From Heteronotia binoei (Eukaryota), in assembly GCF_032191835.1 (NCBI RefSeq), contig NC_083234.1, positions 55,924,001 through 55,988,000 of the forward strand: a DNA stretch of 64,000 nt, read 5' to 3'. A program made the translations under genes and the position numbers. Below are positions 42 through 46,200 of the stretch, piece after piece. Under the pieces are notes generated by a model. The model saw only the letters and a program-made list of their open reading frames with translations. It had not been told where the DNA came from and ran no database searches. The first letter of the stretch is position 1. Every line of letters begins with the position of its first letter.

Positions 42-13364
<13,323 letters not shown>

Positions 13365-13459: not shown

Positions 13460-13508
13460 GTCCATACAAGCTTTGAACAAAATTTACAGGTGTTAACAGC
13501 CAGCGGTC

Positions 13509-17480
<3,972 letters not shown>

Positions 17481-18415: not shown

Positions 18416-18582
18416 CCAGGGTGATCTAATCCAACCCCCAGCACAATATAGGGAACTCAATACTTTTATTACAGCTCACAGGACTGAGAATGCATGAATA
18501 AAGAATTTTTAGGGTTTTTGCATGGTATACTCAACTTGTCAACAGCCACATCAGCACCATCAATCCATAAGAACATAAGATG

Positions 18583-22900: not shown

Positions 22901-23505
22901 GAAGGTGGACCATTAGAGGGGGACAGCATGAGGACACTGCAAAAAAACAAAAACTTGCTCCACTTTAGACACCAAAGTGGAGCAAGAACTCCATGTGGGT
23001 ACATAGCCTCAGAATATTCTTACTGTTGTGCTGGTTTATTGCTATATAAAACAAACCAACAAAGCCCTACAGTCCTGTGATACACTAACTCACCCTTCTG
23101 TTTGCTCCTCCATAGGAAGATTTGAATCAGCCCTAGGAAGTGAAAAAGTAGAGAAGCGTTAAAATAGGGAAAGGATGAGGCTTCTGTTCCTTCTGGCTCT
23201 AGCAGAGGTTTGATGTGACAGGCAGCAGAGATCTATTCCGGGGAGAGAAGAAAAGGTCATTGTGAAGACTCCAATGTGGAGGGTACTGCAATTTAACAAT
23301 CAGTAGAGGGTTCTTTCTCTAGTCTCTTTTCCCTGTCAGTCTTGAAAGCTGTAAAGAAGAGCTGGCAATTCTGCATACCCTTTCTGAACAGCTGGGTATG
23401 AAACATACGGTTGGATCCCACCACTCATCAATGGAACGTGTAGATGGTTGCGAATCTTCCTCCACAAAAATTTATTTCCAGGGTCATGGAATAAATGTGA
23501 CCTAA
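19962..23505 (+). CDS. Candidate small membrane protein with putative coiled coil, 3 exons, 181 aa
   Basis: Exons 19962-19972 (within 24-nt exon 19949-19972; TTTCTTTTCCCTCCAAG / CAG|GTATTT), 21866-22234 (ATCTTCTTCAG / CA|GTAACT), 23340-23505 (TTCTTTCTCTAGTCTCTTTTCCCTGTCAG); all joins phase 2; long hydrophobic stretch LFGFMFLRFLCLLFLSLILGLFLMIILGLLG; AATAAA at 23490-23495. No homolog recognised. Confidence 0.5.
20092..20475. mobile_element. hAT MITE
   Basis: CAGGGGTGTCAAAC ... TTGAGACTCCTG, 8-bp TSD GCCTAAAT / GCCTAATT. Confidence 0.8.
22432..22852. mobile_element. hAT MITE
   Basis: CAGGAGTGGCCAAAC ... GTTTGGCCACCCCTG, perfect 8-bp TSD TACTAAAC. Confidence 0.9.
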
Positions 23506-23513
23506 CAGATGCG

Positions 23514-23812
23514 CAAGAGAGCCCCATGGCGCAGAGTGGTAAAGCTGCAAAACTGCAGTCAAACTCTGCTCACAACCTGAGTTCAATTCCAGCGGAAGCT
23601 GGGTTTGGGTAGCCAGCTCCAGGTTGACTCAGCCTTCCATCCTTCCGAGTTCGGTAAAATGAGGACCTAGCTTGCTGGAGGGAAAGTGTAGATGACTGGG
23701 GAAGGCAATGGCAAACCACCCCGTAAAAAGTCTGCCGTGAAAACGTGAAAGCAACGTCACCCCAGAGTTGAAAATGACTGGTGCTTGCACAGGGGACTAC
23801 CTTTACCTTTTT
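23514..23812 (+). mobile_element. Sauria SINE (Squam1)
   Basis: Head GAGCCCCATGGCGCAGAGTGGTAAAGCTGCA, tail GGGGACTACCTTTACCTTTTT. Confidence 0.9.
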
Positions 23813-23894
23813 AAACAAATGCACTGGTCAGTGGCCTGCAGTGGGGAAGGGGAGAGTAGAACTGTGCTAATGACACTAATTTTATCCATTTCCC

Positions 23895-23955
23895 TCAATC
23901 ACAAGGCTGATAGACCATAGGGGTCTTGCTGTCGTTGGAATAAATTTTCTCATGG
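23895..23955 (-). CDS. Novel TM gene, terminal coding exon (HEKIYSNDSKTPMVYQPCD-stop)
   Basis: Long pyrimidine tract ending TTCTTCTCCAG, phase-2 start, EKIY motif like upstream exons. An AG 13 nt upstream would instead give ILLQP-stop. Confidence 0.65.
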
Positions 23956-26900: not shown

Positions 26901-29900
26901 CGAGGCCCCACCAACGGCAATCAGAAACAAGACTGGGTCAAGCAGGAAATTGGCAGACACAAAGTTGGGCATAAACTGCATCTGAGAGGACAGTGGCATT
27001 CAATGCTGGAATTTCATACGATTCATTACAAGAATATAGTGGTAGATACTCAGTGGTAGAGAACCTGTTTGGTACACTGGGAGGTTCCCAGTTCAGTCCC
27101 TGGAATCTCCAGTTAAAAGGATCTCAGGGACACTCCCTGGCATCTCTAATTAAAAAGATCTCAAGAAGCAAGTGCCTTGCGGGGGTGAAAAACCTCTCTC
27201 TCATGAGAACCTGGAGAGATGCTATTTGGAGAGGCTGAAGCTCAGAGCCAGAGCACTTGCTTGACATGCAGAAAATCCCTGTTCCATCTTTGACATCTTG
27301 ACTTAAAATGAGGCCACAGCAAGACCCGCTGTCCGAAACAACAGAAAGCTACTGGCTATCAGAATAGACAAAATTGAATTAGAAGACCCCAATAATGAAG
27401 TTTTAGCTTCTTTTTGCTGGTAGAATGCTAATTTTTTGAAGCCACAAATTACGTGCACAGCTGTACACAGTTGAGAAAGCAGTGAGTTCTTGAACAAGTT
27501 TCTTAGCAAGACTGCTCCTTCATCTTATTTGTCACACTCACGTAGAAAAAGGTGATGATGGAAGCACACTGATGTAGGACTTCTCAGCAGAGGATCTGGA
27601 ATGACAAGAAACCAATTTCAAGGGCTGCAGCAGCAAGGCCCCAACAGCCATCAGAAGCAAGACTGGGTCAAGCAGGAAATTGGCAGACACAGAGTTGGGC
27701 ATAACCATGCACAAGAAGACCCCAGGATGTTGACGCTGGAATGTCATTGGATTAATTACATGCTTTTGCTTTCTCACTTGCTGCTTTTGTGTTCACAACT
27801 CCTGCCAACTGTTTTACAACCACTGTAACCGTTTTATCATGGGGTGATGATTTTCAGCCTCATTTTAATGATATTCTTTGACTTAATTTGAATTCATCAT
27901 AATTTTTGGCAGGTCTCATTGCTACTGAAGTTTGGAAAATGCACCTAGAATTTTTATGATGGAATACACAATATAAATTATCTGAAATAAGTACACATAC
28001 TACATTTTATTTATCCTTCTAAGAAAGTCTCCTAAGCATACAAACAAAACTTCACACACCAGACAAGTTGGGAGGAGACAGATGTTCCGCATCTCCACCG
28101 ATGCTGAAAACCCTGTTTTCATAAATGTCTCCATCTAATGCCATCTCTTAGGACTCTAACTAGTCATTTCTACTTCTAAGATAAGCCCCCAAAATATCCT
28201 ATGGGTCATTATATACTGTCAAGAAATTTCTCTCCCTCCCTCCCCACCATGTCTTACGTCTGGACTTGATGAACCCCTCCAGAGGTATCGAACTCATTTG
28301 TTATGAGGGCCAGATCTGACACAAATGGGATTTTGTAGGGCCGGGCAACATATGTTAAAAATGTAATGTGAGATAGCAGTAATATAAACTTTATAAAGGA
28401 CTCGATAAACACATTTAAAGATGTTATTTTTAAACTTAAAATACAAATGTGTTTAAAACTCTTGTAATATTTTGTTTAAAATGAAAAGGTGGGGGGAATA
28501 GTGGGATCCAGCAATGCAATTTTTAAAACAAAATGTCAAGAAAAAGCACAAGGATCACAGCAGAAACTAAAAATATAAAATGCTCTGAGCCTGGGAAAAC
28601 AATGAAATGGCATTGCAAGCTTCTCTCTACCCCCCCACCCCCCGGGTATACTCAGATTGGCAATGGACCTCCAATGTAATATCCTCTTTTGACTGTGGAT
28701 TCCCAGGTTAGAGTACTCATTAGGTCAGGTCCATTGAGCAGAGACAAGCTGGGTCAAAGCATCAGCCCTTTATTTGCAAGGATACAACTCCAGGAAGCAT
28801 GAGCATCAGCTGGCTATGCCCCCACCTTTCCATTTTCAACCAAATATTTCAAGAGTTTTAAGCATTATTTCATTTTATGTTAAAAATAATATCTTCAATT
28901 GTGTTTGCCTGTGTCCTTTATAAAGTGTATATCTCTGCTCCCTCCCATTACATTTTATGGCACGCGTGGCCCAGCCCCATAAAGTTCCATTTGTGTCAGA
29001 CTTGGCCCTCCTAACAAATGAGTTCGACACCCCTGTCCTAATGCAAGCAGTTGGTGGCACTGTGCCAGAGGAGAAGCGACAGAGAAACCCCTCCAAGGGT
29101 TGGATGAGCAGCACTTCTTCATACGGAGACGAAGGATGGTTGCTGGGTGCCTAAACGCTTTAGAAAGCTGAAAGGAGTTGCTCTTCTGGGTCAACAGAAC
29201 CACTCCACCACACATGCAATCAATAAATAAAATAGGAAGCACAAAAGGTTTCTTTGTGACGGGCAACTGGTAAAGTCTGAAGTGAGATGAGAATGACTGT
29301 TGATCTTTCAAAGCCTTGCTGTAGAAACTCCGGCGACATATTAAGTGGCTAGACATGCTTTTCTGTGTTAGGCTGCCAGCACACAGCTGCCAAGAGACTG
29401 ATCATTAAGGCTATGTTGCCTGGCCTGCTACCCTCTCTAAGCCAGCTATTATTTAGTTTTTCATTGCTGTCTTGACAACATGCTGAACATGTTATTTCAA
29501 TAACTGGAAATTTCAAAGACTCTGATGCCTGGGTTGCAATAGCGTCAAGTCATTCCATCCTAATTTTACTACTTATATTCCAAATAGGCAAAATAGAAAC
29601 CACTTTCTCTCACTAATAATAATAATTATTGTATGGCAGTCTGTGTAGCACAGCCAGGAGATCCTACGATTGTCTGGCAGTCGGAAGTTCTAGCTTTTAG
29701 TGTTATGTACCACTAAGTGGCGAGCTAGACTTGTTTTTATGGCAAGAGATGTTTCAGAGGTGGTTTGCCTATGCATCCTGGCCCTGGTATTCCTTGGAGG
29801 TCACCCACCCAAATACTAGCCAGGACTGACCCTGTTTAGCTTCTGAGATCTGATGCAACTGGGGTAGCCTGGGCTATCCAGGTCAGGGCACATTCTCCCA

Positions 29901-32900
29901 CTCATATCCAAGGAGGGAATCAATGCAACTTAGAGCACCTGCTTTGCATGCAGAAGACCCCAGCTTCAGTCCTTGGCCACTCCAAGCGAATGGATCTCTG
30001 GCAGAGCATGTTGGAGAAGACTGTTCTTTGCCTGAGATCCTAGAGAGTCACTGCCAGCCAGAGAAGGAGTACTGAGCCAGAGAAGGAATACTAAGGGGAG
30101 GGATGGCAGCTCAGTGGTAGAGCATCTGCTTGGTAAGCAGAAGGTCCCAGGTTCAATCCCCAGCATCTCCAACTAAAAAAGGCAAGTAGGTGTAAAAAAC
30201 CTCAGCTGGAGACAAAACACATGATCCATCTGCCTTTTGGCAGGGAAATGTAGCACATAAAGATACAGCAACAATTCCAAAAGTATTATGCCCCCAAATT
30301 CACCCAGCACCTTAATGTTCTTTCAAGCTGCGGCGAAGTTTCCTTGATGTCCCACTCCCTCCACCACCCTCATGCAGCAGTGGGCAGCAAAAGAACCATC
30401 CTCTTGCTATTTCAACTTACTTGGCTGCTTCCCCTGCTCCATCAGAACTTGGATATTTGGTCTCTGAGCGGCGTCTGAAATCACAGAAAGCACATTTCAC
30501 TGCCACGTTGCCAAATGCAATAAACACTTCTCCATGCAACTCTTGCTACTACTGAGAAAGCAGAGGGCACTTGCAGAGGGCACCAAAAATCCATGGAGTT
30601 TCCCTTGCATTTTCCTTATGTTGCCTGCCACCTCAGCCATTTTCTCTCTCCACTATCATAGGGTATTTTCTTTTTGAACTGGGCAGAGATCTACTTTTTT
30701 TTTTTTTTTACAAAAATGAAAGCTGGGGATTCAGAGGTACTGCAGACCATGGCTAACTGTGCTGCAATAATCTTGCAAATGTTAACTTTTAAAACAGCCA
30801 CGAAAAAGTTGCCTGGTGTGCATATGTGAGTGTGGAGGGGGAATGCCAGCCATGGGGGGCAGAGGAAAGGAAAATGGTGCTTCAAAAATATGCACATTCC
30901 TATCCACCTAGCATGAAAAGGCACTACCTGCAGTCTCTCCAAAAAGTTCCTTATCAGATCAGGTCAAGGGAAGACTACAGCAAAAAAACAATAAAACCAG
31001 GTTTTACCCTGAATACACAACCTCCATGTGGAAGCTACCAAATTATGCTTTTATGTCTGAGGCTAACACTATCTAACCAACGTGGTGCAGCGGTTCATTG
31101 ACAAGGATCCAGGCGATCCAGGAGACCCATGTTTGAATCCTGACTGCTACAGATTCTTGGGTGACCTTGGGCCAGTAAATGTCTCTCAACCTAACCTATC
31201 TCTTTAGGTTGCTGTGAGGATAAAACAGGAGAGAAGGACAAGCTTGTAAACCACTTTGGATCCCCACTGGGAGAAAAAACAGGGCATAAGTATCTAAAAT
31301 AAAAATAAATTCTATAATTCCAACTTGGCAGAAGGGAAAAGGGACAGTTAAAAAGGAGGCCTCTGTGTAATTGACAATAACTAAGTACCAACACAAGCAA
31401 TTGTTACTTGGAATACGATTCAGCATCCAGAGAATCCCAGCTTTCATTTAAAAGAGAAATGCATTTCTAGTCCTCACAATCATGAAAAAGAAGTTTAGAA
31501 GCACACAAGCAATGCTTTTTATAGTATCCAGAGTCAGAAGAAAAGGCAAAGGTGGGGGTTTCAGTGGATTAGATAGGTTCATGGAAGACTAGTCTATCAA
31601 TGGTTACTAGCCACAGTGACTGAGGAGAACCCCCACATTCAGAGACACTAATTGTCTGAATCCCAGAGCCAGGAAGCAACATCAGAGGAAGGCCTCTGCC
31701 TCTTTGCCCTATTGTTGGTTGGCCACTGTATGAGACAGGATCCTGGACTAGATGGGGCACTGGTCTGATTCAGCAGGGCTCTTATCTTCTTCTGCTTGTC
31801 TCCCTCATAATTAGCAAAACTAAGGGCATGCAAATCTACTTAATGAATAGAGGTCACTTTTCTGGATGTGGGAGAACCAGATCAAGGAAACAGAACAGCA
31901 TGGTCTCTAGACAACCCACAGCAACACCAATAGTGCAGACATTGTGTAATTTAAGGAGAGCAACTTGCTGGATCACGCTCACGGTCTGATTCAGCACAAG
32001 GCAGTATTCGGTTTTCGGTACTGACCAAAAGTCTGTCCCACTTCCATACCATCTAGTCTTTCCAGCTCACCTAGGACCAGGGTGCAGGTCTTTAGGATCC
32101 ACGTATGAACTCTCTGCAGCCCTAGAATGACAGAAGGGAGTCTTCAGTGTGGAACTCACAGAGAAGATGCAAAAGACCGTGTAAAACAGCTTACGATGTC
32201 CCATTTCCTTCTCTATCACTGTATAAACTATGCAGATTATTCAAGGCATAGGCTTGTAAAGAAGTTACAGACCAGCTCTGCTTAGGTTAGCCCTAAACTG
32301 TACAGAGTTTACCTCAATTACCAATCATATGGTTGAACAGAAGAAACCAACCAGAGCTAGCAATGCACTGGCCATTAGAGTCACTGGGAAAAGTCCTGGA
32401 GGGGGGCAATGGCCTGCGGACTGCCCCCTCACCAGAGCCAACCCTAGCCCAAGTGAGGGATGGCTCTCACCCTACATGGCACGAGTGGCAGCTGCCACAA
32501 ACTGGTGACCATAACAAAACCCCAAAAAGCAAAATTTACAAATAGAATATAAAACTGACCTATTATGTTTAAAGTCGCCTACATAAGAGGAAAAAGTTGG
32601 CATAAGAAAACCAAAGGCTGCCCAGCAGATGGGCAAAACTAAAACAGGAATTGGGAAGTTGGAGGTAGAAACAGCAAGGATAAGAAATTCAGAATGACCC
32701 CTAAATAGTATTAGGCAGTCCTTTTGATAACTCTGGTCCCAAGCCATAAATGACAGATTTCATAATCATAGACAATTTGAGCATACAATGTTCAGAAGCT
32801 TCTTTAACCTTTATAACCATGGGGTCAGTCAGATTAGAGAGAGCCAGTTTGGTGTAGTGGTTAAGTGCGTGGACTCTTATCTGGGAGAACTGGGTTTGAT

Positions 32901-35900
32901 TCCCCACTCCTCCATTTGCACCTGCTGGAATGGCCTTGGGTCAGACATAGCTCTCGCAAGAGTTGTCCTTGAAAGAGCAGCTGCTGGGAGAGTCCTCTCA
33001 GCCCCACCCGCCTCACAGGGTGTCTGTTGTGGGGGAAGAAGATATAGGAGATTGTAAGCTGCTCTGAGTCTCTGATTCAGAGAGAAGGGCGGGGTATAAA
33101 TCTGCAATTCTTCTTCTTCTATTACACCAAACAGGTGGGGTTTTTTTCTTGGAAATATGCAAGCAATGCTAGTTAAAGATCAGAAAGCAGTCAGGCTTAA
33201 TTTAACAGTTACAAAGTGGGCCTTCAGCATCCCATAAGGCAGATCTATATGTCTCCTGTAACATTATTTATAATAAATGAAATTACTTTGTTTAATTTAA
33301 TTGATGCCCATTGCAGAAATTCTCTTTTATTGGCTCAGAGTTTTGGTAAATTATTATTTTAAAAACCCTAACTGAAAACAGACCTTTCCTTAAAATACAA
33401 CTGCTACTGATTATAAGTAGGGAGGGTAGAACAACTTGCTACTCACTCCTTCATTGATTTGTATTTAGATGATCTTGGGGCCAAATACACAGGCTCTGGA
33501 CGGCGTCTGAAATCACAAAAAGCTGGTCTAAGTATCTTGCCTTAAACAGCCTCCTCTGAGGCCACCGTGTGGATGTCAAACCAGAACTGCTAAAAAAGGA
33601 TATTCAGTTGACTCCCAGAAGCTGGATTCCATAGATCCAATCCACTAATGGTGGCATTTTTCTCCAGTTCAGGGAGCCATCCCCTAGCACAAGAGGTGCC
33701 TGAGTTGGGAAGGCTTCTTGCCTCAAAGGAAAGTGTCACTGTTAGCAACATGAGAAACCATGAAATTCAGCCACACACTTTTGTGAGAACTTGGGCAAGA
33801 GACTATCAGAGGGTTTTTCTTGACTTCTTTTGCCCCAGGCTTGTAATAAAGTAGGCAATACTCTTGGGAATGCAACTTTGCTTTCTCTTTCCACCAGGGC
33901 TTTTCTTGTAGAAAAAGACCAGCAGTAACTCATTTGCATATTAGGCCACACCCCTGATGTTACCATTGTTTCACATGGGGCTTTTTGTAGAAAAAGCCCT
34001 GCAACAATCTAACTAACAACTGTAATAACTATCTACAACTAACTACAACCTACAAATATAAGAGAAAAAAAGTTCACCGACCGAAGCAGAAAGATCGACT
34101 GATCAGCGCGGCGGTCAGAAGAGAACTGGCGGGATGACCGCGCCTGTCGCAGTGAGCATGCGGGGTGGGGCTCCTGGGCATGCGCACTGGGGCGTCGGCG
34201 CGGAAATCCGCAGCTTTTGAGTTTACCGATCGAGATCGGCGCAGGCGCCTTACTCCCATCAGTGTGATGCACAAAGACCACGAAGAAGATCTGCATTCCT
34301 GCTCAAAAAAAGCCCTGCTTTCCACTAGGCAAGGACAGACAATCGCCAGGCAATGCCATCATCAGAGTTATATAGTATATCTAGTAGTAAAGTGGGTTGG
34401 CTCAGACCAAAGTGACAAAAATCAGATGGCCACAGACAAAATAAGGAATTCAATGTATTTGGGATATTCTCCGACAATGTAGAAAATATCACCTTGTAAA
34501 TTAGGCAAAAGGGAAAATAAATGCCCCAACACTGACTGAGTACACTTCAGAAGGCACAGAATGTTCAGAGAGCCAGTTAAGGGGGGGTGGGATAAATGGC
34601 TTGCTTGAGTCGCTGGGATACAGAATCCTGGAAGGGATAGGAGTTTCCAAACTGATTATTCCTCCCAGCCCTACCACTTGCCAGAAGCATTTTGCTTCTC
34701 CTAAGTAGCAAGCTTGATGGCGAAATGCCTAAAAAGCTGCCCACATAATCAGAGTATACAGAAATATACTCACTTTCAAATTCAAGGTGGAGGAAAGGGG
34801 TGGAAATACCGAAAATGACCAGAAGAGGACTGAGCATGCTCATTGCCCTCCAGTAGGCATGAATTATCAGCAGTAGTTGGGTATTGGAAAAGCTCCACCT
34901 ACTTGAGTTCCTAACAGCTTAAAGTATCCCAGAAGCAGAGATTTAAGCTGGGGGGAGATTTTCCTCTGTCCTCCCCCTCCACTCTCCCTCAATTTGTTTC
35001 ACAGATTTCATAAATATATGCATGACATTTCTCTAATGATTCCTGCCACTAGAGCACATGACAGATCATAGCCCACATAAACTCACAAGCCAAAGAGATC
35101 TGTTCAGATTGCATAATTTTGCAACAAGTTTTTTTATGGTGCAAAATTCAGAATATTCTTCATCTGAATTACAGAAATAAATTGCTCAGAAGTATACAAA
35201 CTGCTACTGGTTTGGCACATGCAATTTACGGGATTGGCAGGAGGGGCCTTGTTGGAGGAGCCATTGACTAGACTCTGCCATGAGGCTACTGTGAACTGTG
35301 CTCCCTGGTGCCACCAACCCCAGAGACTGGAAGTGCCAATGGCTTCATTCCTAGATACATTCTGGACCAGCACATTAGACCCTAGGAATCTCTGACATTA
35401 ACACAGATCAGTTTTTAGACTTCATGGTTGCAAAGAAAGACTAGAAAGTGCATGGACACTGCCTTCTGTAATCTCAGAAGTTAGAGAAGCAGCTTAGCAA
35501 GGTTCCTAGCAGTCATAATACGACTTCAGCTCTGCACCATGTGCTCACCCTTGCCATCGCTCTGGTGTGACCTTTTGCATAATTCAGATTGTGTAATTTT
35601 GCAAGAAGTTTTTTATGGTGCAAAATTCAGAGTATCATTAGTCTGAATTACAGAAATAAATTGTTCAGGATTATACAAACTGCTACTGGTTTGTCACATG
35701 CAACTTACGGGATCGGCGGGAGGGCCCTTGTTGGAGGAAGTGAGTCTTTTCTATCTTTTTTCTCCTTTTTGTCTTTTTTCCTTGGACACAAGACAAAGAG
35801 ACCCCTTGTTAATACAGCTCTGCAGTAATGGGCTACCAAACAGGATCTTGCTGCCCTGACATATCTCTAGGCCCAAGATCAATATGCTTACTGCTCTAAA

Positions 35901-38900
35901 AGGGCTCCAATGTACATGAACAAAACAGGTAGGCATCCACAATGGTGTTACCCCAAAAAGTTCTGAGTAAACCAACTAATTCCCTGATCTGCCATCGTAA
36001 GAAAGGGAAAGGGAGGTTGCTACTTCTTTCTGTATGACTATCACTTGCAGTGACCACTAGTGCCCAGTCCTAGGGGCACACGTGAGACCACAGATGAACA
36101 TAGGAAGAGCCCTGCTGGATCCGAGCGCAGGCCCCTCTACTCCAGCATCCTGTTGCCAACGATGGCCATCAAGAGACGTCCAGGATAGCTTTGAAGCTGC
36201 CTCATAGCAATGGTGTTCTGTTAAGCTCCCTTTGAACACAGAGGCTTCATTCTGTCATCATGGTCTAATAGTTGTCAACACACTTCCGTTTAAATTGGTT
36301 AATTCCACTGTTAAAGGACACAGCAGTGTACTGAAAAAAAAAAATGTTAGCAGCAGATACTGTGAGCAGCAGAGTTACAGGGCCCACAGTTCAACAGCAG
36401 AGCTAATGCCTTTCATTCAGAAGGTTCCAGATTGAATCCAGTACCTTGGGTACAAAACATGGTGGGGGGGAGATGGGCCAATGGCCTGATTCTACATAAA
36501 GCAGAGTTATATGTTCAAGAGATGCTGGCAAAAGAAGGGTATAGTTAGGGGGTCTCATCAGGAATAGCAAGACTTACAACAGGCTTCCCTCGCTGAAGAA
36601 CAGGAACATGAGCCATGACTGCACTGGGGACCAGGCCTGTAGCTGCGAGGGCGCCTGTGGGGACACAGCCCCCCCAACTTCTGGGTGAGGCCCCCTGACT
36701 TGGGGCCCCCAAACAGCCTCCAGGGCCTCTGCTGCATCCTGGAGCATAGGACAGGGGGCAGAAGCAGTCCCCAGCCTCCCCCTCCAGTTAAAAGAGCTGC
36801 GGGCCGATCAGCTGATCAGCGGGCCCTTTAACCCAGCACTGGATTCAACTGCTCCATAGCTATTGGTGCTCCTGACTTGGCTGGTGACGATGAGTCAGGG
36901 TGCACTAGGACCCAGTAGAGCAGACCCTACCAGCTGCCTGTTGTCATGGGCTGCAACTCTCTCTGGAGGTGGCAGGGATCCTCTATAAATTTTAGCAGCA
37001 TTTTTACATCTAAAAGCTTCCCCGCCACAAGTAAATGTTCCATCTGACTGCAAAACTTCCCCCTTCTAATGCATATCTGAAGCTCTTAATGTTCTTTGTA
37101 ATTCACAAGGTAAAACTCGCTCCCTCCCCCACACACGCAGGGGAAGAGCATTTCCTCTTTTAAGCCCTCCCCCACCTTCCTCGATCTCTCTAGCAGGCCA
37201 TTTATTTAGCTTCAGCTCCACAAGGCTGGTTCCTACCAAGAGAATGACTCAATGTATTTTTAAATAACAAGACACCCCGTATGTGTGTTCACTATAACTT
37301 GTGAACAGGACTTGTGTGTGTGCATGTGTGTTTGTGGTGGAAGGGGGGGGAGGGGGAAGGCTGGCAATATGCTTTCATTACAGTTATCCTGGATTTGGGT
37401 AGCAGAACTGTGATATATGGGCTTTAATTCATAGAGTTAACAACTTTGGCTGGTAAATTCCTGGATATTTTTGGTGGATCCTGAGGAAGGCAGGGAGCTC
37501 AGTGGCATGTAAAGTCAACATCCCTCCCCCCCCCCCCCCAAAAAAAAGCCATTCTGTACTGGGGAAATTATCTCTGTAGTCCAGAGAACATTTGTAATTC
37601 TGGGTGATCTCCAGGCCCCACCAGGAGGTTGGAAGCCCAATACCTTGGGAGTAAACCCACTGAATAAGAGGACTAAAGGTAGTTCTGCTTTCCATTGCTT
37701 CAGGTGACCATCCTGTAGTTTGCTTTAATTTTCACACACCCCCGCCCTCCCAACTTTGTTATTCCAAGGAAGTTTCCCATCCAAATACTTGCCAGAGCAA
37801 TTTCAAGTTTTTGAAAATTGGTTATTTGGGGGGGTGGGGGCAGTAGGGAGTTTGAGTGTTCTGGGAACAGAAACAGATTTGGGTGGGTAGCAACGCTGGT
37901 CTGAAGTAATAGAACAAAATAGAACAAAATTTGAGTCCGGTGGCTCCTTTAAGGCCAACAAAGTTTAATCCTGGCACCAGCCAGTGTGATGGTAGGTCAG
38001 GGTGGCCATGAGAGCAGCTATGGATTGGGGCCCTTGAGTGCCCCCCCAAAAATCAAAGGCCCCCTGACCTTCCAAATTCTGGATACGTGGCTGCTGGGGA
38101 CCCACTACAGGGATGGAGGTGGGGTGGCGGCTGATGTAGCAAAACACAGGGAAAAGGAAGGCCCCTGATTTTGAGGCCTCCAATGACTCACCATTGTTTG
38201 TTCATCAAGCGCAGGATGACAACTGCCACCAGCAGCAGAACCAATGTGGAGAAGAAACCCAAGAAGGCCAAGGAGCCTATGATAGCCACCAGCGTACTCT
38301 TGCTCAACACCTCAGGGCAAATGCATGTTGTTTGTGTTGCTATGAAAGAAAGGGGAAGGCCACATGAGAAATCATTCTCCTGAATTCCCAAGCCTTTCCT
38401 TCCAGCAGGGAAGCCAGTTAAAACTCTTCAAGATTTTAGTCACTAATTTCCTGTCTCCACATGACTCCCAGGCAACATAGAGCATTTACCCCCAAATCAA
38501 CTTGCTCTCCTCTTAGCCACATCTCACGCCCACCCCCAGAACCCCACCTACCTCACCTCCATAGTCAAACGACTGATTCTGGAAATGAAAGATGTCTTAC
38601 TTGGTAGTAAGGCCTGCCGGTTCCCAACTGACACCTCGCCGGAATCTTCAGGGTACTATGGGTGATAAAACTGAGTAAGTTCATGATCTTGTTTTGGTTC
38701 CAAGCAACACATCTCCATGGCCAAACATGAATGACCAGTTCAAACTCTGGCATAATTTATTTAAAACATTTAAATGCCATCTTTTCACTCAGTACAGGGT
38801 CAAAACATTAAAACAAATTTTAAAATACTTATCTATAAAATGACAAGAACAGTGTAACAAAACACAAACGTGTAGACACATACACTTAAAGATGAAGGAC

Positions 38901-41184
38901 AGTCAAACAGAAATGTTCACTCACTTGCGGAAGCCAATGATAGAGGGAAATCAACAAAACCTTCTGGCAAGGGAATTCCACCGTTTCAGTGCCATGACTG
39001 AGAAGGCGCTTTCTGGGGTGCCACCTGTCTAAGCTCAGACGGCAGAGGCACCTGCAGCAGGGCCTCCAAGATGACTGTAGCTGATAGGTTCATATGGGAG
39101 CAAGTGGTTCTTAAAGGATAGCAGATGCAATGAAAATTCTTTCTTTGCCTTTGGAGATCTGCTGCCAGGCAAACTGAACAGCATTAGGCTAGAAGTTACA
39201 ACAGGCTGATGGGAAACAAAGCTGTTCCACATTTCTCCTCAGGAGATAATTCCTTTGTAAAGCCTCTGAGTGTCCATGCAGCATTTTTAAGTGTTCCAAG
39301 CATATTACGTTCATCGGCCACTATCATTATTCCTACAGCACACTGTAATCACAGCAGAAGCAAAATTCAAGCCCGGGGCCTCCTGCTTTGTACTTCAGTC
39401 TTTTGTATTCTGTGCTACACTAGCTTCCCAATCAAAATCTCTCCAGCCACAGTTCTTTCTTATTTACCTTGAACTATTAATTGCTCTACTGAACCCTCCT
39501 CTGTCCCTGCACAGAGGATTTAAGGTGACACTCATTCAGTGGCATTTCTGTACTCACCCTCCTTAACATCCTTATTGGTCTATGGACAATATTTTCACTA
39601 TCTTCTGATTCATCTGAAAGGGTACTCATTTGGTCTCCTTTTGCTGATAGTTCTTGGGAAGCAAAACTGCGTCCCTGCATTCTAGAGGTCTCTGCCCCAT
39701 TTGTTTTTGCTGGAAATCAAAGACAGAAGATTCACACTTGGTTAAAATCCAATAGGAGAAATGATCAAGTCCCTTCCATGGTTGAACATTGAGCCACTTG
39801 TACAAGACATGAGATACAGGGCTCCCCACAGATCAGTGTTCTCACCCAACACTTAATTAGATCATCTGGAATGCTGGAGTTGGGTGCCCTCAGTATAGTG
39901 AGAACACACAACCATATAGGTCTGTTCCTGAGTCTTCAAGAAGCTGCTGCCTCAGCTGTGAACCAGCGCTCAGTATTAAGTTGGATCCATTGCCCCATAC
40001 TTCCCTCTAAGTTACTGATCCCTCTTAAAAGAAAACTTTTACAATGTTCTGATGATGTTTAACAATGACACAAATAATTAGGATCAAACTACCTGCTGGA
40101 AAAGTGCCTAGAGAATTGTGGATAGTGCCCATCTGGTTACTCTGTTCCACTATTAAAAATATTGGGAACCTGCAAGTCATCTTCTTAAATATATTATGGG
40201 GAAGGAGCTTCCTTGGGGCGTCATATCTGTATCTTTGTAACTGATTTAAAGTGGAGGAACATGACATGGATTTATAGCCCTATTGGCTAGGATCCAAAGA
40301 AGCACTCAACTACTTCATGACATCCATGAGAGGTAGGCAGTGGTGGTATTTGGGGCTTTTCTTTGTACTACAGCATGCTCAAACATGTACCAACCCAAAG
40401 AACTTTTTAAAAACCCAACTGTGATAGGGCATGGAGAGGGACACTGCTGTTCAAAACAAAGGTAATCAAGAACCCCACTGGGCATATCCAAGCTCTTGGA
40501 TGCACCTAAAGTGGCTTGCTGGATCACAGTCATTATGAGTTTGCAAGAATAAGCAGTACAGCCACCTGGGAAAGGGCTACAATTACCTGAGCATAATCTG
40601 GCAAAAATCACTGAAACTATGCACTTATATTAGTGAAAGAAAAATCAGCAACTTAAAGGCAACTAACAACCCTAACAGGACAGTTTGTTCACAACTGGAG
40701 CACCACATTTCATTATCATTTGTGAACTTCTATTTCAACATATTTCTTCCTGGTTCTTGAGATCAGTTGAATAGGCCTTGCTTTTGTGTGTTTATATGAG
40801 AACCTTCTTTGATATGGCACCCACTTTGTGGAAACAAGATAGTGGGATTTCTCAGGATGTTATTTCTGCACCCCAAACAATTTTCTGAAGACTTTAGTAC
40901 TTACAATAGAATCAAGAATTACATGCCATTCTGCCCATTTCTATGGTCAATGCACCAAATCTAAACAGTGAAGAGCCAAAGGCTCCCCCACAAACCCAAA
41001 ATCTAGAGTGTGTGGAGGAAAACAATCCATGGTCATTTGCTAGAAAAATCATAAGCCTTTCAAGATCTCAACAACTACTGAGAAAGTTACCACAATCCAA
41101 ACAAACTCTAGAGTGGAACTCACATGAAGATGAGGCAATTACACTCATGGAGAATACCAAGCCACCCAGACATGCCAACAGCAT
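23895..41184 (-). CDS. Putative single-pass type I membrane protein with TMEM210-like TM module and long tyrosine-motif cytoplasmic tail (15-17 exons, ~344-363 aa)
   Basis: Exon chain 41124-41184, [40587-40610], 39558-39709, 38601-38655, 38192-38339, 36578-36592, 35709-35780, 33447-33506, 32071-32121, [31408-31440], 30421-30474, 27542-27595, 26809-26862, 26042-26095, 25535-25588, 24391-24480, 23895-23955. Every exon has AG/GT boundaries, phases match in series and the joined frame is open to a TGA at 23895-23897. Brackets mark optional symmetric exons. Confidence 0.8.
24391..24480 (-). CDS. Novel TM gene, double tyrosine-motif exon (PSPEHVYASIDRSQPEHSYANIGGPQSES)
   Basis: Very strong acceptor CTTTCTCCTTCCCCCTGTCCTTGTGTTCCAG, donor TAT|GTAAGC, 90 nt, phase 2 to 2; internal PEH-x-YA-x-I repeat. 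Confidence 0.85.
25535..25588 (-). CDS. Novel TM gene, repeat exon D (STPEKAYADVQRSPRFS)
   Basis: Acceptor GGTTTCTTGTCATTCCAG, donor TAT|GTGAGT, 54 nt, phase 2 to 2. Confidence 0.8.
26042..26095 (-). CDS. Novel TM gene, repeat exon C (STPEKSYVSMQGAPAFS)
   Basis: Acceptor GGTTTCTTGTCATTCCAG, donor TAC|GTGAGT, 54 nt, phase 2 to 2. Confidence 0.8.
26809..26862 (-). CDS. Novel TM gene, repeat exon B (SSPPKPYVSMQPAPPFS)
   Basis: Acceptor GGTTTCTTGTCGTTCCAG, donor TAC|GTGAGT, 54 nt, phase 2 to 2. Confidence 0.8.
27542..27595 (-). CDS. Novel TM gene, repeat exon A (SSAEKSYISVLPSSPFS)
   Basis: Acceptor GGTTTCTTGTCATTCCAG, donor TAC|GTGAGT, 54 nt, phase 2 to 2. Confidence 0.8.
28280..29035. mobile_element. 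hAT-type element ends (complementary termini) with AT-rich interior
   Basis: CAGAGGTATCGAACTCATTTGT ... ACAAATGAGTTCGACACCCCTG; no TSD found, may be two partial copies. Confidence 0.55.
29735..29890 (-). mobile_element. 5S rRNA-derived SINE fragment
   Basis: CCACCCAAATACTAGCCAGGACTGACCCTGTTTAGCTTCTGAGATCTGATG. Confidence 0.65.
29915..30215 (+). mobile_element. Two tandem Squam3-like SINE fragments
   Basis: Decayed copy ~29915-30095 followed by a younger head GCTCAGTGGTAGAGCATCTGCTTGG...GGTTCAATCCCC. Confidence 0.7.
30421..30474 (-). CDS. Novel TM gene, tyrosine-motif exon (RRSETKYPSSDGAGEAA)
   Basis: Acceptor GCTTTCTGTGATTTCAG (paralogous to the 33506 acceptor), donor CAA|GTAAGT, 54 nt, phase 2 to 2. 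Confidence 0.8.
31408..31440 (-). CDS. Novel TM gene, optional exon (WDSLDAESYS)
   Basis: 33 nt, phase 2 to 2, open, but moderate acceptor (TTTCTCTTTTAAATGAAAG) and donor (GTAACA). Confidence 0.4.
31565..31790 (+). mobile_element. CR1-type 3' UTR fragment
   Basis: ATGGAAGACTAGTCTATCAATGG...GGACTAGATGG...GTCTGATTCAGCAGGGCTCTTA; related pieces at ~36015-36260 and ~50790-51090 (minus). Confidence 0.6.
32071..32121 (-). CDS. Novel TM gene, tyrosine-motif exon (AAESSYVDPKDLHPGP)
   Basis: Acceptor CTCCCTTCTGTCATTCTAG, donor TAG|GTGAGC, 51 nt, phase 2 to 2. Confidence 0.8.
32837..33120 (+). mobile_element. Same SINE family, full length
   Basis: Near-identical to 6536-6830. Confidence 0.8.
33447..33506 (-). 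CDS. Novel TM gene, tyrosine-motif exon (RRPEPVYLAPRSSKYKSMK)
   Basis: Acceptor GCTTTTTGTGATTTCAG, donor GGA|GTGAGT, 60 nt, phase 2 to 2. Confidence 0.8.
33896..34001. mobile_element. Short MITE (CAGGGCTTTT...AAAAGCCCTG)
   Basis: Terminal inverted repeats; related sequence nested at ~7892-8000. Confidence 0.6.
34050..34315 (-). mobile_element. CpG-rich DIRS-like terminal repeat fragment
   Basis: Isolated CpG-dense block with TCTTCGTGGTCTTTGTGCATCACAC and TGCGCATGC motifs reminiscent of reptile DIRS1 termini; assignment from memory, no TSD seen. Confidence 0.5.
35101..35740. repeat. Two diverged ~160-bp copies (35101-35262, 35582-35740) containing the 3' half of the RALPPIP exon and its donor-side intron
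   Basis: Shared GGTGCAAAATTCAGA...CTGAATTACAGAAATAAATTG...TATACAAACTGCTACTGGTTTG...TTACGGGAT. Confidence 0.85.
35709..35780 (-). CDS. Novel TM gene, basic/proline-rich exon (KKDKKEKKDRKDSLPPTRALPPIP)
   Basis: Acceptor CTCTTTGTCTTGTGTCCAAG, donor CCC|GTAAGT, 72 nt, phase 2 to 2; RxLPPxP class I SH3 ligand. Confidence 0.8.
36578..36592 (-). CDS. Novel TM gene, 15-nt microexon (C-EGSL-L)
   Basis: Acceptor GTTCCTGTTCTTCAG, donor GTT|GTAAGT, phase 2 to 2. Confidence 0.65.
37429..37480 (-). CDS. Novel TM gene, possible alternative terminal exon (WIHQKYPGIYQPKLLTL-stop)
   Basis: Strong acceptor CCCTGCCTTCCTCAG, phase-2 start matching the TM exon donor, TGA followed immediately by ATTAAA. Confidence 0.45.
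38192..38339 (-). CDS. Novel TM gene, transmembrane exon (TQTTCICPEVLSKSTLVAIIGSLAFLGFFSTLVLLLVAVVILRLMNKQ), TMEM210-like
   Basis: Acceptor CTTTCATAG, donor ATG|GTGAGT; long hydrophobic helix preceded by CxC; resembles recalled human TMEM210 ([23 protein letters not shown]...); position next to the ANAPC2 3' end matches human TMEM210. Confidence 0.85.
38601..38655 (-). CDS. Novel TM gene, ectodomain exon (YPEDSGEVSVGNRQALLP)
   Basis: Acceptor TTTTATCACCCATAG, donor CAA|GTAAGA, 55 nt, phase 0 to 1, bridging the phases of its neighbours exactly. Confidence 0.7.
39558..39709 (-). CDS. Novel TM gene, ectodomain exon (KTNGAETSRMQGR...IVHRPIRMLRR)
   Basis: Acceptor TTTGATTTCCAG, donor AGG|GTGAGT, 152 nt, phase 1 to 0, open frame. 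Confidence 0.7.
40587..40610 (-). CDS. Novel TM gene, optional 24-nt microexon (LIFARLCSA)
   Basis: Branch-like CACTAAT, acceptor GTTTCAG, donor CAG|GTAATT; phase 1 to 1; would extend the signal peptide. Confidence 0.4.
41124..41184 (-). CDS. Novel TM gene, candidate exon 1 (signal peptide MLLACLGGLVFSMSVIASSS)
   Basis: ATG at 41184, 20 hydrophobic/small residues, phase-1 donor T|GTGAGT compatible with the next exon. The 5' end is the least certain part of the model. Confidence 0.65.
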
Positions 41185-43208: not shown

Positions 43209-46200
43209 TCAGCTGCAGCTCTTGGGCAGCCGGTAGACACCACCAGAGTAGATGAGCTGCTGATCTCGGACCTTCTTCTGGAGGAAACACTGCAGCTCCT
43301 GGATGTCAATCTCTGTCACCATGGGGCCTGTCATCACAAAGATCTTGAGCATGCTGTGGATGCGCTCCAGTGACAGACTCTCTAGATTCGTCAGCATTGC
43401 CTGGATGTAAGTCCAGAAAAGCTGCAGGGTACACCAAAGGAGAAATTAAAAAAAATAGATGCTGTAGATTATGGTGCATACACAAGAGGGCTGTGCAGTG
43501 CACCAATTATACCCTCTCACTTGGAATCCTAGCACCATTTATGAAACATACAATTTCCCTAAAAACATGCATACTGTGTATGCTCTGATATGCTATTATT
43601 ATTATAATATGCTATTATTAGACCAGCACTGAAAACAAGTTCTCAATCTCAACCATGGTTCAAATTAAACCTTGTTTAGAAAAAGAGACATCACATTCTG
43701 TCCCAAAAGCTCACTCTGGAAAGGCACCAGCATCTATAACTTCATTCAGCCAGAAAATCCTGAATGCTTATGTTTGGAATATGCTACCTGGGGAGGGACA
43801 GTGGCTCAGTGGTAGAGCATCTGCTTGGGAAGCAGACGGTCCCAGGTTCAATCCCTGGCATCTCCAAAAAAGGGTCCAGGCAAATAGGTGTGAAAAACCT
43901 CAGCTTGAGACCCTGGAGAGCCGCTGCCAGTCTGAGAAGACAATACTGACTTTGATGGACCAAGGGTCTGATTCAGTATAAGGCAGCTTCATATGTTCAT
44001 ATGTACCTTGAATAAATTATATATAAAGCAAGACATGAATGTCTGAGGCTTTGCAGAATGTATCCAAACTGAAGAATCTACCTTTACTTGGCATGCAACC
44101 AGATGGCATACTTGGCATGTAACTGGAAGGCGCAGGCTGCACGCCAGCTGAGCTTTAGAACCTGCCTGCAGTTGATTCAAGAAAGAAATCATCCCCTGCC
44201 CCACGTAACTACAGCTCTGAGAGCACAAGAGCAGTACCTGCAACTCCTCCTCCTTCTGGTCAGCTTGCGAGGCCATGGCTGAATCGCCTTCTTCATCGCT
44301 GTCAATCAGCACCACTTTCTCTGCCCGGTCCTTCTGTTCCTCTTCAATCACAGTGAATGTGCCTGGAGGCTCCTCCCGCAGCACACCTTGCTGCAGCCAC
44401 AGGGTCATCTTGCGCCGGAGGGATGTCACAGGAACCTTCAGCACCTCACTCAGCTCATCCAGAGTCCACGTGCCTGAGAAGAGTTCAAAGGCGAAAAGTG
44501 TTACAAGGAAAACAGTCAGGAGCAAGGAATATGTTTTGGGGGGAGGGGGAGATCAGAACAGGGCACAGCTCATCAGTGGTGAGGCACAGGTATGCCGGAA
44601 GGGTTGGGAAAAATCCTCTAGCTGAGATCATAGAGAGCAGTTGCTAGTAAGGATGGCTATAGAATAAAGGACCAGGCAGATCAAATGATCTGTGGAAAGC
44701 AATGACTTACAAACAAATCACAATATGTTTCACACTTTTATAGAACACCCTCTAAGTCTGGATCATCTACTCTCAATACACCCCACTCCCGTCCAAAGCC
44801 TTTTCCTAAATCAACAGAGCAGGGGTCCCCAAGATGCCCACCTACATGTTTCCTAGTGCTCATCAAGTGTTTCCAGAAGTGGGTGGGGCTAGGTGGGCCT
44901 TCTACCCAGCAGAGCTTCTGATTAGCTAATGGACATTTGATTGGATGTACAAAACATTTTTAAGATGTTGGTTTGACAGCAGCTGCCACCACAGCGCAAG
45001 AATTGTTGCCATGTGACTGAAAGTAAGCTACAGCATTTTGTGGCTGGCTACATTTCTTGTGACAACCCTTTTGTGATTGTGCCCACCACCCTGTGTCAGA
45101 ATTCCAAAACTGTCCACAGACTCAAAAAGACTGGAGACCCCTGCAGTAGAGTCTCTTCCATGTTGTGCCACAGGTAAACCCACTGCTGCGCAGCAACAGC
45201 TGCAACCACTTCCTCCCAGCAGAGGGCAGCAGTGTATAGCCGCTATAGAGAAGTGGACTCACTCTTGCTTTGGAAGTGCAAGATGATTGCTGCATGCACC
45301 GGGGAGACAGAGAGGGAAAGGGTGCGGTCTGCCAACTCCAAATCCAGTTTCACCAAGCCCAGATGGTGCTTCCAGTTCAGCGTCCTCATAGCCTAAGAAC
45401 AACCAGGCAGAAGGGGATACTCAGCAACCTGCCCCTCATGCTGCATCAACAGAAGAAAGGGAGGGAACTGGGAAAGGCAAAAGCAAGCGCAGCACCTGAT
45501 CTCTGCCCCCTTCCCAGAGACATCAGCTGCCTAGTGTAACAAAGTAATTGGTTCCCTAGTCCTTACTGCTATAGTCTTGAGCAAAGCAAAATTTCATGTG
45601 CATGTGCAATTACCATTGGGAAATATGATGCCAAGGAACTGAGAGTTGGTAGCTACTGCAAGTAGCAGAGGAAGATGTAGGCAGTGTAAACGGAAGATGG
45701 CCAGTTGGAAAATTTGTGACTTCAATATGTCCTGCAGACTGCCTATCTATCTGATACAACATCATCCTGGCTTTCCTTCCAAGAACTCAGGGCAGTGTAC
45801 ATGATCCTCCCCCCACCCTGCTCCATATTATCCCCATGACAAGCTTGTGAGGTAAGTTAGACTGAGAATGGGCCCAAGGTCATCCAGCAAGCTTCAAAGG
45901 TGAACAGGGAATAAGAACCTGTATCTCCTCATTCACTCTGAGAGCTACATCAACCTGGCCTCTATCAGTACACCATCTATTTATTGAAGAACAGAGGTCC
46001 ACAGCAAAACAGGGACAGCTAAGTCTCCATCACATCTCAGGACCACAAGGCAAAGACCCCAAATCAACATTTCAAGGGGAGATTTTTGAGCATTAAGCCT
46101 GGCTATTCAATTAAAAACTTCTACCCAACCCCCGATGGATTTAGAGGCTACAGACAGTGAGCCTACTGCCCCCTCCAGACTGCCTCGCTGACCTTTAGTT

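What the first reader, a model, noticed from the sequence alone, without database searches (positions are those of the whole stretch)
38192..38339. The transmembrane exon looks like TMEM210, suggesting a radically different reptile version of an obscure mammalian gene
Seen in sequence: TTCICPEVLSKSTLVAIIGSLAFLG after a phase-1 acceptor, on the same strand as and directly downstream of ANAPC2. Recalled knowledge: human TMEM210 lies beside ANAPC2 on the same strand, is testis-enriched, ~147 aa, with [23 protein letters not shown] at the start of its TM exon. Inference: orthologue or paralogue of TMEM210 with a longer ectodomain and a much larger Tyr-rich tail, either gained in squamates or lost in mammals.
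Basis: partly seen in the sequence, partly recalled or inferred. Interest (0 to 1): 0.7.

Follow-up and report, generated by a model that had tools for sequence, protein, structure and literature searches.

The report
Lizard counterpart of mammalian TMEM210
The exon is real and encodes the membrane-spanning segment of an unnamed lizard and snake membrane protein that is very probably the positional counterpart of the small mammalian gene TMEM210, although only this one exon is still recognisably alike.

Summary
A 148-nt minus-strand exon (38339..38192, phase 1 in, phase 2 out) encodes a juxtamembrane Cys-x-Cys, one TM helix and a basic stop-transfer. It belongs to a multi-exon gene starting 2 kb downstream of ANAPC2 on the same strand.

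The exon is conserved (52-89% identity) in "uncharacterized" proteins of lizards, snakes and an amphisbaenian. In three other squamates the gene also sits between ANAPC2 and a beta-tubulin gene.

I fetched three non-human mammal loci. TMEM210 (Pfam PF15195) is there the first gene downstream of ANAPC2 on the same strand. Both genes have a signal-peptide exon ending in phase 1 and a TM exon of phase 1 to 2 that starts 3-4 codons before CxC, followed by phase-2 exons.

Sequence similarity is weak but specific:
- PF15195 is the top Pfam family for most lizard TM exons, always in the same register, but below the gathering score (13-18 vs 27 bits).
- hhalign gives 75-77% probability over 41-43 ungapped columns.
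- Column-shuffle nulls give p=0.003 and 0/400.

Ectodomain and tail show no similarity. Verdict: probable positional orthologue of TMEM210, radically remodelled, and not a Pfam-defined member. Which form is ancestral is unresolved. Other scan notes concern this same gene on this window, not other DNA.

The parts
41124..41184 (-). Exon 1: ATG (41184) and signal peptide MLLACLGGLVFSMSVIASSS, donor T|GTGAGT in phase 1
   Evidence: Read from the sequence. tblastn match to the N-terminus of Hemicordylus P0007. Same N-terminus in the cDNA-like protein P0027.
39558..39709 (-). Exon 2 (152 nt, phase 1->0): Ser/Glu-rich ectodomain ending in the basic motif IVHRPIRMLRR
   Evidence: Splice sites read. 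67% identical to Gekko kuhli P0001. The motif IVRRAVRR is conserved in the family. No counterpart in mammalian TMEM210.
38601..38655 (-). Exon 3 (55 nt, phase 0->1): YPEDSGEVSVGNRQALLP, membrane-proximal ectodomain
   Evidence: Splice sites read. tblastn match to P0001. YPE(D/E) is conserved in the family. No counterpart in mammalian TMEM210.
38192..38339 (-). The finding: TM exon (148 nt, phase 1->2) encoding CxC, a TM helix and a basic stop-transfer. It is the only part alignable with mammalian TMEM210.
35709..35780 (-). Exon 5 (72 nt, phase 2->2): Lys-rich stretch and proline motif (W)KKDKKEKKDRKDSLPPTRALPPIP
   Evidence: Matches the P0001 C-terminus KKEKKERKDKKDTDGGPNRSLPPIP.
24391..32121 (-). 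Span holding the predicted phase 2->2 tyrosine-motif tail exons: 32121-32071, 30474-30421, 27595-27542, 26862-26809, 26095-26042, 25588-25535, 24480-24391
   Evidence: Splice-site and phase scan. Weak tblastn support for 32120-32004 and 24500-24390. Earlier scan notes report RNA reads for the 54-nt array, which I did not re-test.
23895..23955 (-). Last exon (phase-2 acceptor): HEKIYSNDSKTPMVYQPCD, stop TGA ending at 23895
   Evidence: It takes the place of the family's C-terminal ...H(I/L)YEEV(E) motif.
43209..43445 (-). Last coding exon and stop of ANAPC2, the upstream neighbour on the same strand (context)
   Evidence: The preceding exon is 94% identical to Varanus ANAPC2.

Best explanation
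The exon is the transmembrane exon of a type-I single-pass membrane protein gene (about 16 exons, 41184..23895, minus strand). This gene is the squamate positional orthologue of mammalian TMEM210.

Shown: both genes are the first gene downstream of ANAPC2 on the same strand. Both have a signal-peptide exon ending in phase 1. Both have a TM exon of phase 1->2 that starts 3-4 codons before a juxtamembrane Cys-x-Cys, and 38 residues separate the first Cys from the stop-transfer Arg in each. In both, the exons after the TM exon are in phase 2.

The squamate gene differs by two extra ectodomain exons (phase 1->0 and 0->1, so the frame is kept) and by a long tail of phase-2 symmetric mini-exons. Neither is alignable with the mammalian protein.

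Inferred function: the signal peptide is removed. The acidic ectodomain, possibly trimmed at the conserved basic RR|YPE motif, leaves the CxC just outside the membrane, where it could form an interchain disulfide. The helix anchors a disordered cytoplasmic tail. Its proline motif and tyrosine motifs (YxN types; ...HIYEEV at the C-terminus in most species, YSND in this gecko) would recruit SH3 and SH2 proteins after phosphorylation, i.e. a transmembrane adaptor. The mammalian protein keeps only the anchor module and has a different short acidic, proline-ended tail.
For: Synteny: the gecko window, Sceloporus L001, Varanus L008 and Pantherophis L009 all show SSNA1(-) ANAPC2(+) X(+) tubulin(+) CMI2B-like(-). 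Three non-human mammal contigs show ANAPC2 -> TMEM210 -> LRR gene on one strand. In L002 and L006 the ORF carries a precomputed PF15195 hit. In L004 the TMEM210 exons were located by tblastn and confirmed by Pfam. L002 is Pteropus by 100% identity to P0101.

Exon plan: gecko, Sceloporus TM exon 148 nt, phase 1->2, mammal TM exon 136 nt, phase 1->2, then a 30-nt phase 2->2 exon.

Sequence:
- PF15195 hits 8 of 13 family members, against at most 2 for any other family.
- It is the top family for 5 of 7 squamate TM segments at E 0.0055-0.31, with the first Cys always on profile position 3.
- Mammal TM exons hit the same profile positions 1-43 at E 1e-20 to 1e-23.
- hhalign gives 75.5-76.7% probability, E 2e-5, 41-43 ungapped columns and 33-34% identity.
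- Within-block column shuffles: profile score 36.7 against 11.0+-7.3, p=0.003; hhalign score 30.3 against 12.8+-3.0, maximum 23.3, 0 of 400.
- A squamate-only HMM puts the TMEM210 TM-exon ORF at the top of the six-frame ORFs in each of the three mammal loci (tied for first in L006).

No sauropsid protein turned up when the mammalian tail was used as query.
Against: The Pfam gathering score is not met (13.2 bits for the gecko, at most 17.6, against 27). For the gecko exon alone, DUF3742 scores slightly better and ECSCR equally. Snake segments and P0002 give no PF15195 hit, and snakes lack the first Cys. hhalign probabilities for single TM helices are known to be over-optimistic, and shuffled columns are not the same as real unrelated TM proteins. 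No similarity was found in the signal peptide, ectodomain or tail. The downstream neighbour differs (tubulin against the LRR gene), so one breakpoint of a rearrangement lies next to the gene. A phase-1 signal-peptide exon is common in secreted and membrane proteins (general knowledge), so the phase agreement is only mild support. The adaptor function is inferred from motifs only. One bird contig shows no such exon within 8.3 kb downstream of ANAPC2.
Confidence: 0.75

Rival explanations
1. Gene X is unrelated to TMEM210. It is a lineage-specific single-pass membrane adaptor that happens to lie downstream of ANAPC2 (for example, brought there with the tubulin block by the rearrangement). The TM-exon likeness is generic type-I anchor similarity plus a chance CxC.
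For: All HMMER scores are below family thresholds. Other TM families reach similar E-values for single members (DUF3742, ECSCR, DUF7269). Tails and ectodomains are unalignable. Synteny is broken on the 3' side. Snakes lack the first Cys.
Against: Out of 24,736 Pfam families, the one that keeps coming first is the one whose gene holds the same position in mammals. The alignment is ungapped from CxC to the stop-transfer Arg and beats 400 of 400 composition-matched shuffles (also p=0.003). Intron positions and phases around the exon agree.
Confidence: 0.15
2. X is a paralogue, not the orthologue. An ancestral duplication gave a short TMEM210 and a long adaptor; mammals kept one and squamates kept the other, or squamates still have a true TMEM210 elsewhere.
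For: The architecture differs greatly outside one exon. I could not scan the whole gecko genome.
Against: There is one family gene per squamate species in the protein searches. No sauropsid protein was retrieved with the mammalian TMEM210 tail (limited to proteins sharing words). Only one gene lies between ANAPC2 and tubulin in three annotated squamates. Only TMEM210 lies between ANAPC2 and the LRR gene in mammals.
Confidence: 0.07

Closest known systems
TMEM210 (Pfam PF15195), placental mammals; testis-enriched and dispensable for male fertility in mice (PMC9226692)
   Same: First gene downstream of ANAPC2 on the same strand. Signal-peptide exon in phase 1. TM exon in phase 1->2 starting 3-4 codons before CxC. 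Shared pattern T-x-C-x-C...L-S-(K/R)...L-x-A...L-A...V-A-V...R without gaps (14 of 44 identical between gecko and Pteropus). Following exons in phase 2.
   Different: The mammalian protein is 145-160 aa from 4 exons within about 1 kb, and its mature ectodomain is only about 4 residues before the first Cys. Its tail (VQED.MDL..V.VES...EEPPPPP) has no tyrosine motifs in most species. The gecko gene spans 17 kb, has two extra ectodomain exons, and carries a long Lys/Pro/Tyr tail with an amplified 54-nt exon. Pfam score is 13-18 bits against the cut-off of 27. The downstream neighbour is tubulin, not LRRC26.
Transmembrane adaptor proteins of leukocytes (SIT1, TRAT1, PAG1, LAT, LIME1); comparison from general knowledge
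   Same: Single TM helix, no enzymatic or folded domain found by Pfam, and a cytoplasmic tail with a proline motif and several tyrosine motifs of SH2-docking type. The extracellular juxtamembrane Cys resembles the disulfide-linked dimers SIT1 and TRAT1.
   Different: No significant sequence match (PF15330 SIT: 1 of 13 members at E 0.21). There is no cytoplasmic CxxC palmitoylation motif. The ectodomain is longer (about 75 residues before processing). The genomic location is different.
ECSCR (PF15820)
   Same: Sub-threshold Pfam hit of the gecko exon (E 0.14). Also a type-I protein with a Ser/Thr-rich ectodomain.
   Different: Only 1 of 13 family members hits it, and there is no synteny. Treated as generic TM similarity.

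Membership tests
TMEM210 (PF15195) | Score at or above the Pfam gathering threshold (27 bits) | tested here: not met
   Gecko exon 13.2 bits, E 0.13. Best squamate segment 17.6 bits, E 0.0055. 8 of 13 members hit below threshold. Mammal TM exons score 73-82 bits.
TMEM210 (PF15195) | Gene immediately downstream of ANAPC2 on the same strand | tested here: met
   Gecko window: ANAPC2 stop about 43209, ATG of X at 41184. Squamate loci L001, L008, L009. Mammal loci L002, L004, L006.
TMEM210 (PF15195) | Exon plan: signal-peptide exon with phase-1 donor, TM exon phase 1->2 beginning just before CxC, later exons phase 2 | tested here: met
   Gecko; Sceloporus; mammals. The squamate gene has two extra exons (1->0, 0->1) between the signal-peptide and TM exons.
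TMEM210 (PF15195) | Juxtamembrane T-x-C-x-C, L-S-(R/K), TM helix and Arg in fixed spacing | tested here: met
   Ungapped alignment over 41-43 columns at 33-34% identity. Shuffle nulls p=0.003 and 0 of 400. Snakes have Gly in place of the first Cys.
TMEM210 (PF15195) | Conserved cytoplasmic tail (GVQED.MDL..V.VES...LE..L; proline-rich C-terminus) and total length of about 150 aa | tested here: not met
   hhalign of squamate tails against mammal tails: probability 0.3%, only a poly-Pro overlap. Full-length comparison aligns the TM region only. Squamate proteins are 260-350 aa.
TMEM210 (PF15195) | LRRC26 as the next gene downstream | tested here: not met
   In squamates a beta-tubulin gene follows, then a CMI2B-like gene. 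Mammals have an LRR gene there.
TMEM210 (PF15195) | Testis-enriched expression | not testable with these tools
The mouse data come from PMC9226692.
Transmembrane adaptor proteins (SIT1/PAG1/LAT type) | Single TM helix, no folded domain, several tyrosine docking motifs in the tail | tested here: met
   No Pfam domain on any family member. Tyr-motif exons and the PxxP exon. This is a resemblance in architecture only.
Transmembrane adaptor proteins (SIT1/PAG1/LAT type) | Sequence membership in a named adaptor family | tested here: not met
   PF15330 SIT: 1 of 13 members at E 0.21. No other adaptor family was listed.
Transmembrane adaptor proteins (SIT1/PAG1/LAT type) | Tyrosine phosphorylation and SH2/SH3 partner binding | not testable with these tools
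   Needs biochemistry.

The most novel reading that the evidence does not exclude
Mammalian TMEM210 and the squamate gene descend from one ancestral amniote gene, and the 3' half of that gene was exchanged or lost through the chromosomal rearrangement whose breakpoint lies directly behind it (LRR gene in mammals, tubulin block in squamates). On this reading the obscure, dispensable mammalian testis gene is the stump of a phosphotyrosine transmembrane adaptor that lizards and snakes still use. The alternative is that squamates built a new signalling tail by exonisation and exon amplification on a minimal anchor gene.
Probability: 0.25. Interest if true: 0.6.

Novelty: new variant of a known kind. 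Interest (0 to 1): 0.45.

Why it matters
Every named TMEM210 protein retrieved here comes from a placental mammal (limited to proteins sharing words). The squamate proteins are all annotated "uncharacterized" or "hypothetical" (one isoform as "proline-rich protein 36-like") and have no Pfam domain.

Linking the two gives the squamate family a name and an evolutionary anchor. It also extends TMEM210 beyond mammals. And it offers a compact example of how a gene can keep only its membrane-anchor exon while its ectodomain and signalling tail are gained, lost or replaced, possibly in connection with a nearby inversion.

The link also suggests a hypothesis for the mammalian protein: a juxtamembrane CxC dimerising anchor. 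It further suggests that the squamate protein is a tyrosine-phosphorylated adaptor worth testing. It does not bear on a long-standing open question.

Tried and rejected
- **RNA evidence.** Transcription rests instead on the cDNA-like contig L007, on the NCBI models, and on earlier scan notes that I did not re-test.
- **P0007 lookup.** The look-up of encoding contigs found nothing on record, because it is a minor isoform.
- **Other Pfam leads.** The gecko exon hits DUF3742 at E 0.053 and ECSCR at E 0.14. Single members hit SIT, DUF1180 and Cadherin_C_2. I rejected these as generic TM or low-complexity matches, because at most 2 of 13 members share any one of them.
- **Family profile search.** The full-length squamate profile found squamates only, among the 8000 candidates scored. 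This says little about distant relatives.
- **Mammalian tail search.** It found 41 proteins; every one that carries a species name is a placental mammal.
- **Bird contig L003.** tblastn, an HMM search, a hydropathy scan and a Pfam scan of the 8.3 kb downstream of ANAPC2 found no TM exon of this kind and no named domain. This is inconclusive because the contig ends there.
- **Other regions.** hhalign of tails, ectodomain and signal peptides found nothing.
- **Uncorrected tblastn.** With composition correction off, tblastn gave Pro-rich low-complexity hits of similar E-value. I therefore did not use it as evidence.
- **Literature.** The second search was badly framed and showed nothing that links TMEM210 to reptiles. 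The first listed 15 of the 22 papers naming TMEM210, none on reptiles by title.
- **Possibly human sequences.** The ANAPC2 fragment P0082 is identical, over the compared stretch, to the human chain shown, so I took it as possibly human and did not fetch its contig. P0063 (one difference) and the Pan cluster P0134 were likewise left unused.
Full report
**1. Observation.**
On the minus strand, 38339..38192 is a 148-nt open stretch bounded by tttcatAG| and |GTGAGT. Its 48 whole codons read TQTTCICPEVLSKSTLVAIIGSLAFLGFFSTLVLLLVAVVILRLMNKQ.

ANAPC2 is on the same strand upstream. Its last coding exon ends ...YRLPKSCS* at about 43209. The exon before it is 94% identical to Varanus ANAPC2. A beta-tubulin gene lies further downstream at 13.5-16.8 kb.

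**2. The gene around the exon.**
Reading upstream gives three exons:
- ATG at 41184 with a signal peptide (MLLACLGGLVFSMSVIASSS) and a phase-1 donor at 41124.
- A 152-nt exon, 39709..39558 (phase 1->0), encoding a Ser/Glu-rich stretch that ends IVHRPIRMLRR.
- A 55-nt exon, 38655..38601 (phase 0->1), encoding YPEDSGEVSVGNRQALLP.

These join the TM exon in frame. Downstream come:
- A 72-nt phase 2->2 exon, 35780..35709, with a Lys-rich stretch and LPPTRALPPIP.
- A series of 51-90-nt phase 2->2 tyrosine-motif exons.
- A last exon, 23955..23895, reading HEKIYSNDSKTPMVYQPCD*.

tblastn with relatives supports exons 1-3, the TM exon and two tail exons. Earlier scan notes report spliced reads for the tail array, which I did not re-test.

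**3. Relatives.**
An exhaustive phmmer search of the 48 residues against 1.84 billion representatives gave 13 hits at E<=1e-3. Those that carry a species name are "uncharacterized" or "hypothetical" proteins of Gekko kuhli (89% identical), Hemicordylus, Sceloporus, Phrynocephalus, Podarcis, Varanus, Rhineura and Naja. A profile of full-length members found 20 proteins; all that carry a name are squamate (now also Pantherophis, Thamnophis, Notechis, Vipera, Python, Pogona, Zootoca, Erythrolamprus), and none has a precomputed Pfam domain.

The family shares the following features:
- a signal peptide and an acidic ectodomain;
- the motif IVRRAVRR|YPE(D/E);
- (C/G)xCPEVL(A/S/T)KGTL followed by a TM helix and LR..(E/D)KQ(R/K)K;
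- RPLPPVPPPRPEHTY and several Tyr motifs;
- a C-terminal HIYEEVE.

A 1051-bp Logan contig (L007) carries an uninterrupted 843-nt family ORF (P0027), i.e. a spliced message running through all these exons.

**4. Synteny.**
In Sceloporus (L001), Varanus (L008) and Pantherophis (L009) the order is SSNA1(-), ANAPC2(+), X(+), tubulin(+), CMI2B-like(-). This matches the gecko window.

To reach mammals, I searched with a C-terminal ANAPC2 exon from the window. I chose fragments that differ from the human chain in the PDB and fetched their contigs.
- L002 has the ANAPC2 last exon at 10609-10839, a PF15195 ORF at 13839-14141 and an LRR gene at 15079-16548, all on the plus strand.
- L006 shows the same order.
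- L004 does too, once the TMEM210 exons were placed by tblastn.
- L002 is a Pteropus: its last exon is 100% identical to "transmembrane protein 210 [Pteropus medius]".

So X and TMEM210 are each the first gene downstream of ANAPC2 on its strand, 1.1-3 kb away. The next neighbour differs. From memory of the human map (not tested here), a single inversion with breakpoints at TMEM210|LRRC26 and TUBB4B|SLC34A3 would turn one order into the other.

**5. Exon plan.**
In L002:
- The signal-peptide exon (ATG at 13136) ends ...CCTGCTGCAG|GT, in phase 1.
- The TM exon 13379-13514 (136 nt) starts CT GGA ACC TAC TGC GAA TGC and ends AAG GG|GT, in phase 2.
- A 30-nt exon (13735-13764) is phase 2->2.
- The last exon runs from 13943 to the stop at 14141.

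L004 and L006 have the same junctions. [quoted passage not shown] Sceloporus has a 148-nt phase 1->2 TM exon, like the gecko. The squamate gene therefore equals the mammalian plan plus two frame-neutral ectodomain exons and a much longer run of phase-2 tail exons.

**6. Sequence tests.**
*Pfam.*
- The gecko exon hits PF15195 at E 0.13 (13.2 bits, exon residues 3-45 on profile positions 1-43), next to DUF3742 (E 0.053) and ECSCR (E 0.14).
- Across 13 family members, PF15195 is hit by 8 (best E 0.0061). No other family is hit by more than 2.
- On the excised TM segments it is the first family for 5 of 7 (E 0.0055-0.31), always with the first Cys on profile position 3. Two segments (a snake and P0002) give nothing.
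- Mammal TM exons hit the same profile positions at E 1e-20 to 1e-23.
- All squamate scores lie below the gathering score of 27 bits.

*hhalign.*
- Squamate TM exon (19 sequences) against mammal TM exon (3): probability 75.5%, E 2.4e-5, 41 ungapped columns.
- Against 16 full-length non-human TMEM210 proteins: probability 76.7%, E 2.1e-5, 43 columns.
- Full length against full length: only this region aligns, at probability 55%.

*Own nulls.* Mammalian columns were shuffled within the ecto, TM and post-TM blocks.
- Ungapped BLOSUM62 profile score: 36.7 at offset +1 against 11.0+-7.3 (best of 17 offsets), p=0.003. The ecto block alone gives p=0.006 and the TM block alone p=0.03.
- hhalign score: 30.3 against 12.8+-3.0, maximum 23.3, 0 of 400 shuffles.

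*Other measures.*
- A squamate-only HMM ranks the TMEM210 TM-exon ORF at the top of the six-frame ORFs of each mammal locus, tied for first in L006 (E 0.009, 0.47, 0.28).
- Gecko against Pteropus is 14 of 44 identical without gaps. CxC, LS(K/R), L.A, LA, VAV and the stop-transfer Arg are all in register.
- Tails, ectodomain and signal peptides show nothing beyond poly-Pro and a hydrophobic core.

**7. Reading.**
Three partly independent lines point the same way: position, intron positions and phases, and position-specific similarity, with the syntenic family ranked first out of 24,736. I put orthology at about 0.75. The exon alone would not carry that claim; the a-priori positional candidate does.

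It is not a Pfam-defined member: the gathering score, the tail and the length criteria fail. I therefore file it as a remodelled variant.

The direction of change is open. The one outgroup contig, a bird (L003), shows no such exon and no Pfam domain within 8.3 kb after ANAPC2, and the contig ends there.

**8. Function (inferred).**
The gene encodes a type-I anchor with an extracellular juxtamembrane CxC. The second Cys is invariant; the first is Gly in snakes. This suits an interchain disulfide, as in SIT1 or TRAT1 (general knowledge).

The basic motif sits exactly at the exon 2/3 junction (RR|YPE) and is conserved. It could be a processing site that leaves a short stub.

The tail has an SH3-type proline motif and SH2-type tyrosine motifs, which fits a transmembrane adaptor. 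None of this was tested. Mouse Tmem210 is testis-enriched and dispensable for fertility.

**9. Limits and omissions.**
All searches were exon by exon or used database proteins.
- I did not fetch contigs of ANAPC2 fragments that could be human (P0082, P0063), nor use the Pan cluster P0134.
- The whole gecko genome could not be scanned for a second TMEM210.
- The word-based searches cannot show absence of relatives.

Noticed in passing
window 16800-23895 (minus strand), compared with L001 15419-17785, L008 16801-19263, L009 15592-17709: The gap between gene X and the tubulin gene is about 7 kb in the gecko but only 2-2.5 kb in Sceloporus, Varanus and Pantherophis, where no gene is annotated. An earlier scan note places a second unannotated-looking gene at 19949-23505.
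   Followed up: no
P0006, P0009, P0012, P0016-P0018, P0020-P0023 (snake-type sequences; P0006 carries no species name): All these snake-type sequences have Gly in place of the first Cys of the juxtamembrane CxC (EGSCPEVL); Python P0024 reads EANCPEVL, with Asn there. Lizards keep both Cys. Only the second Cys is invariant in the family.
   Followed up: partly
P0008 (Sceloporus) and P0010, between the RRAVR and YPE(D/E) motifs: Two predicted proteins share an extra segment (...SPAQLSCGCRP.GGA.NSQ.SDY..Q) that the other family members lack. It may be a lineage-specific extra ectodomain exon, or retained intron sequence in the gene models.
   Followed up: no
window 23895-23955 (minus strand): The gecko C-terminus reads HEKIYSNDSKTPMVYQPCD*. 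Most other family members with a complete C-terminus end ...H(I/L)YE(E/Q)V(E/N/Q). The terminal tyrosine motif has therefore changed from the YEEV type to a YxN type in this lineage.
   Followed up: partly
L003 13060-13160 (plus strand): The only hydrophobic stretch downstream of ANAPC2 on the bird contig (MPSLLLFVLLAVTAGLG) looks like a signal peptide of an unidentified next gene. The ORFs behind it have no Pfam match.
   Followed up: partly
L008, whole locus, minus strand: The Varanus annotation has a 639-residue flavodoxin/FAD/NAD-binding (NDOR1-like) gene model that spans the whole ANAPC2-X-tubulin locus on the opposite strand. This is probably an over-extended gene model.
   Followed up: no
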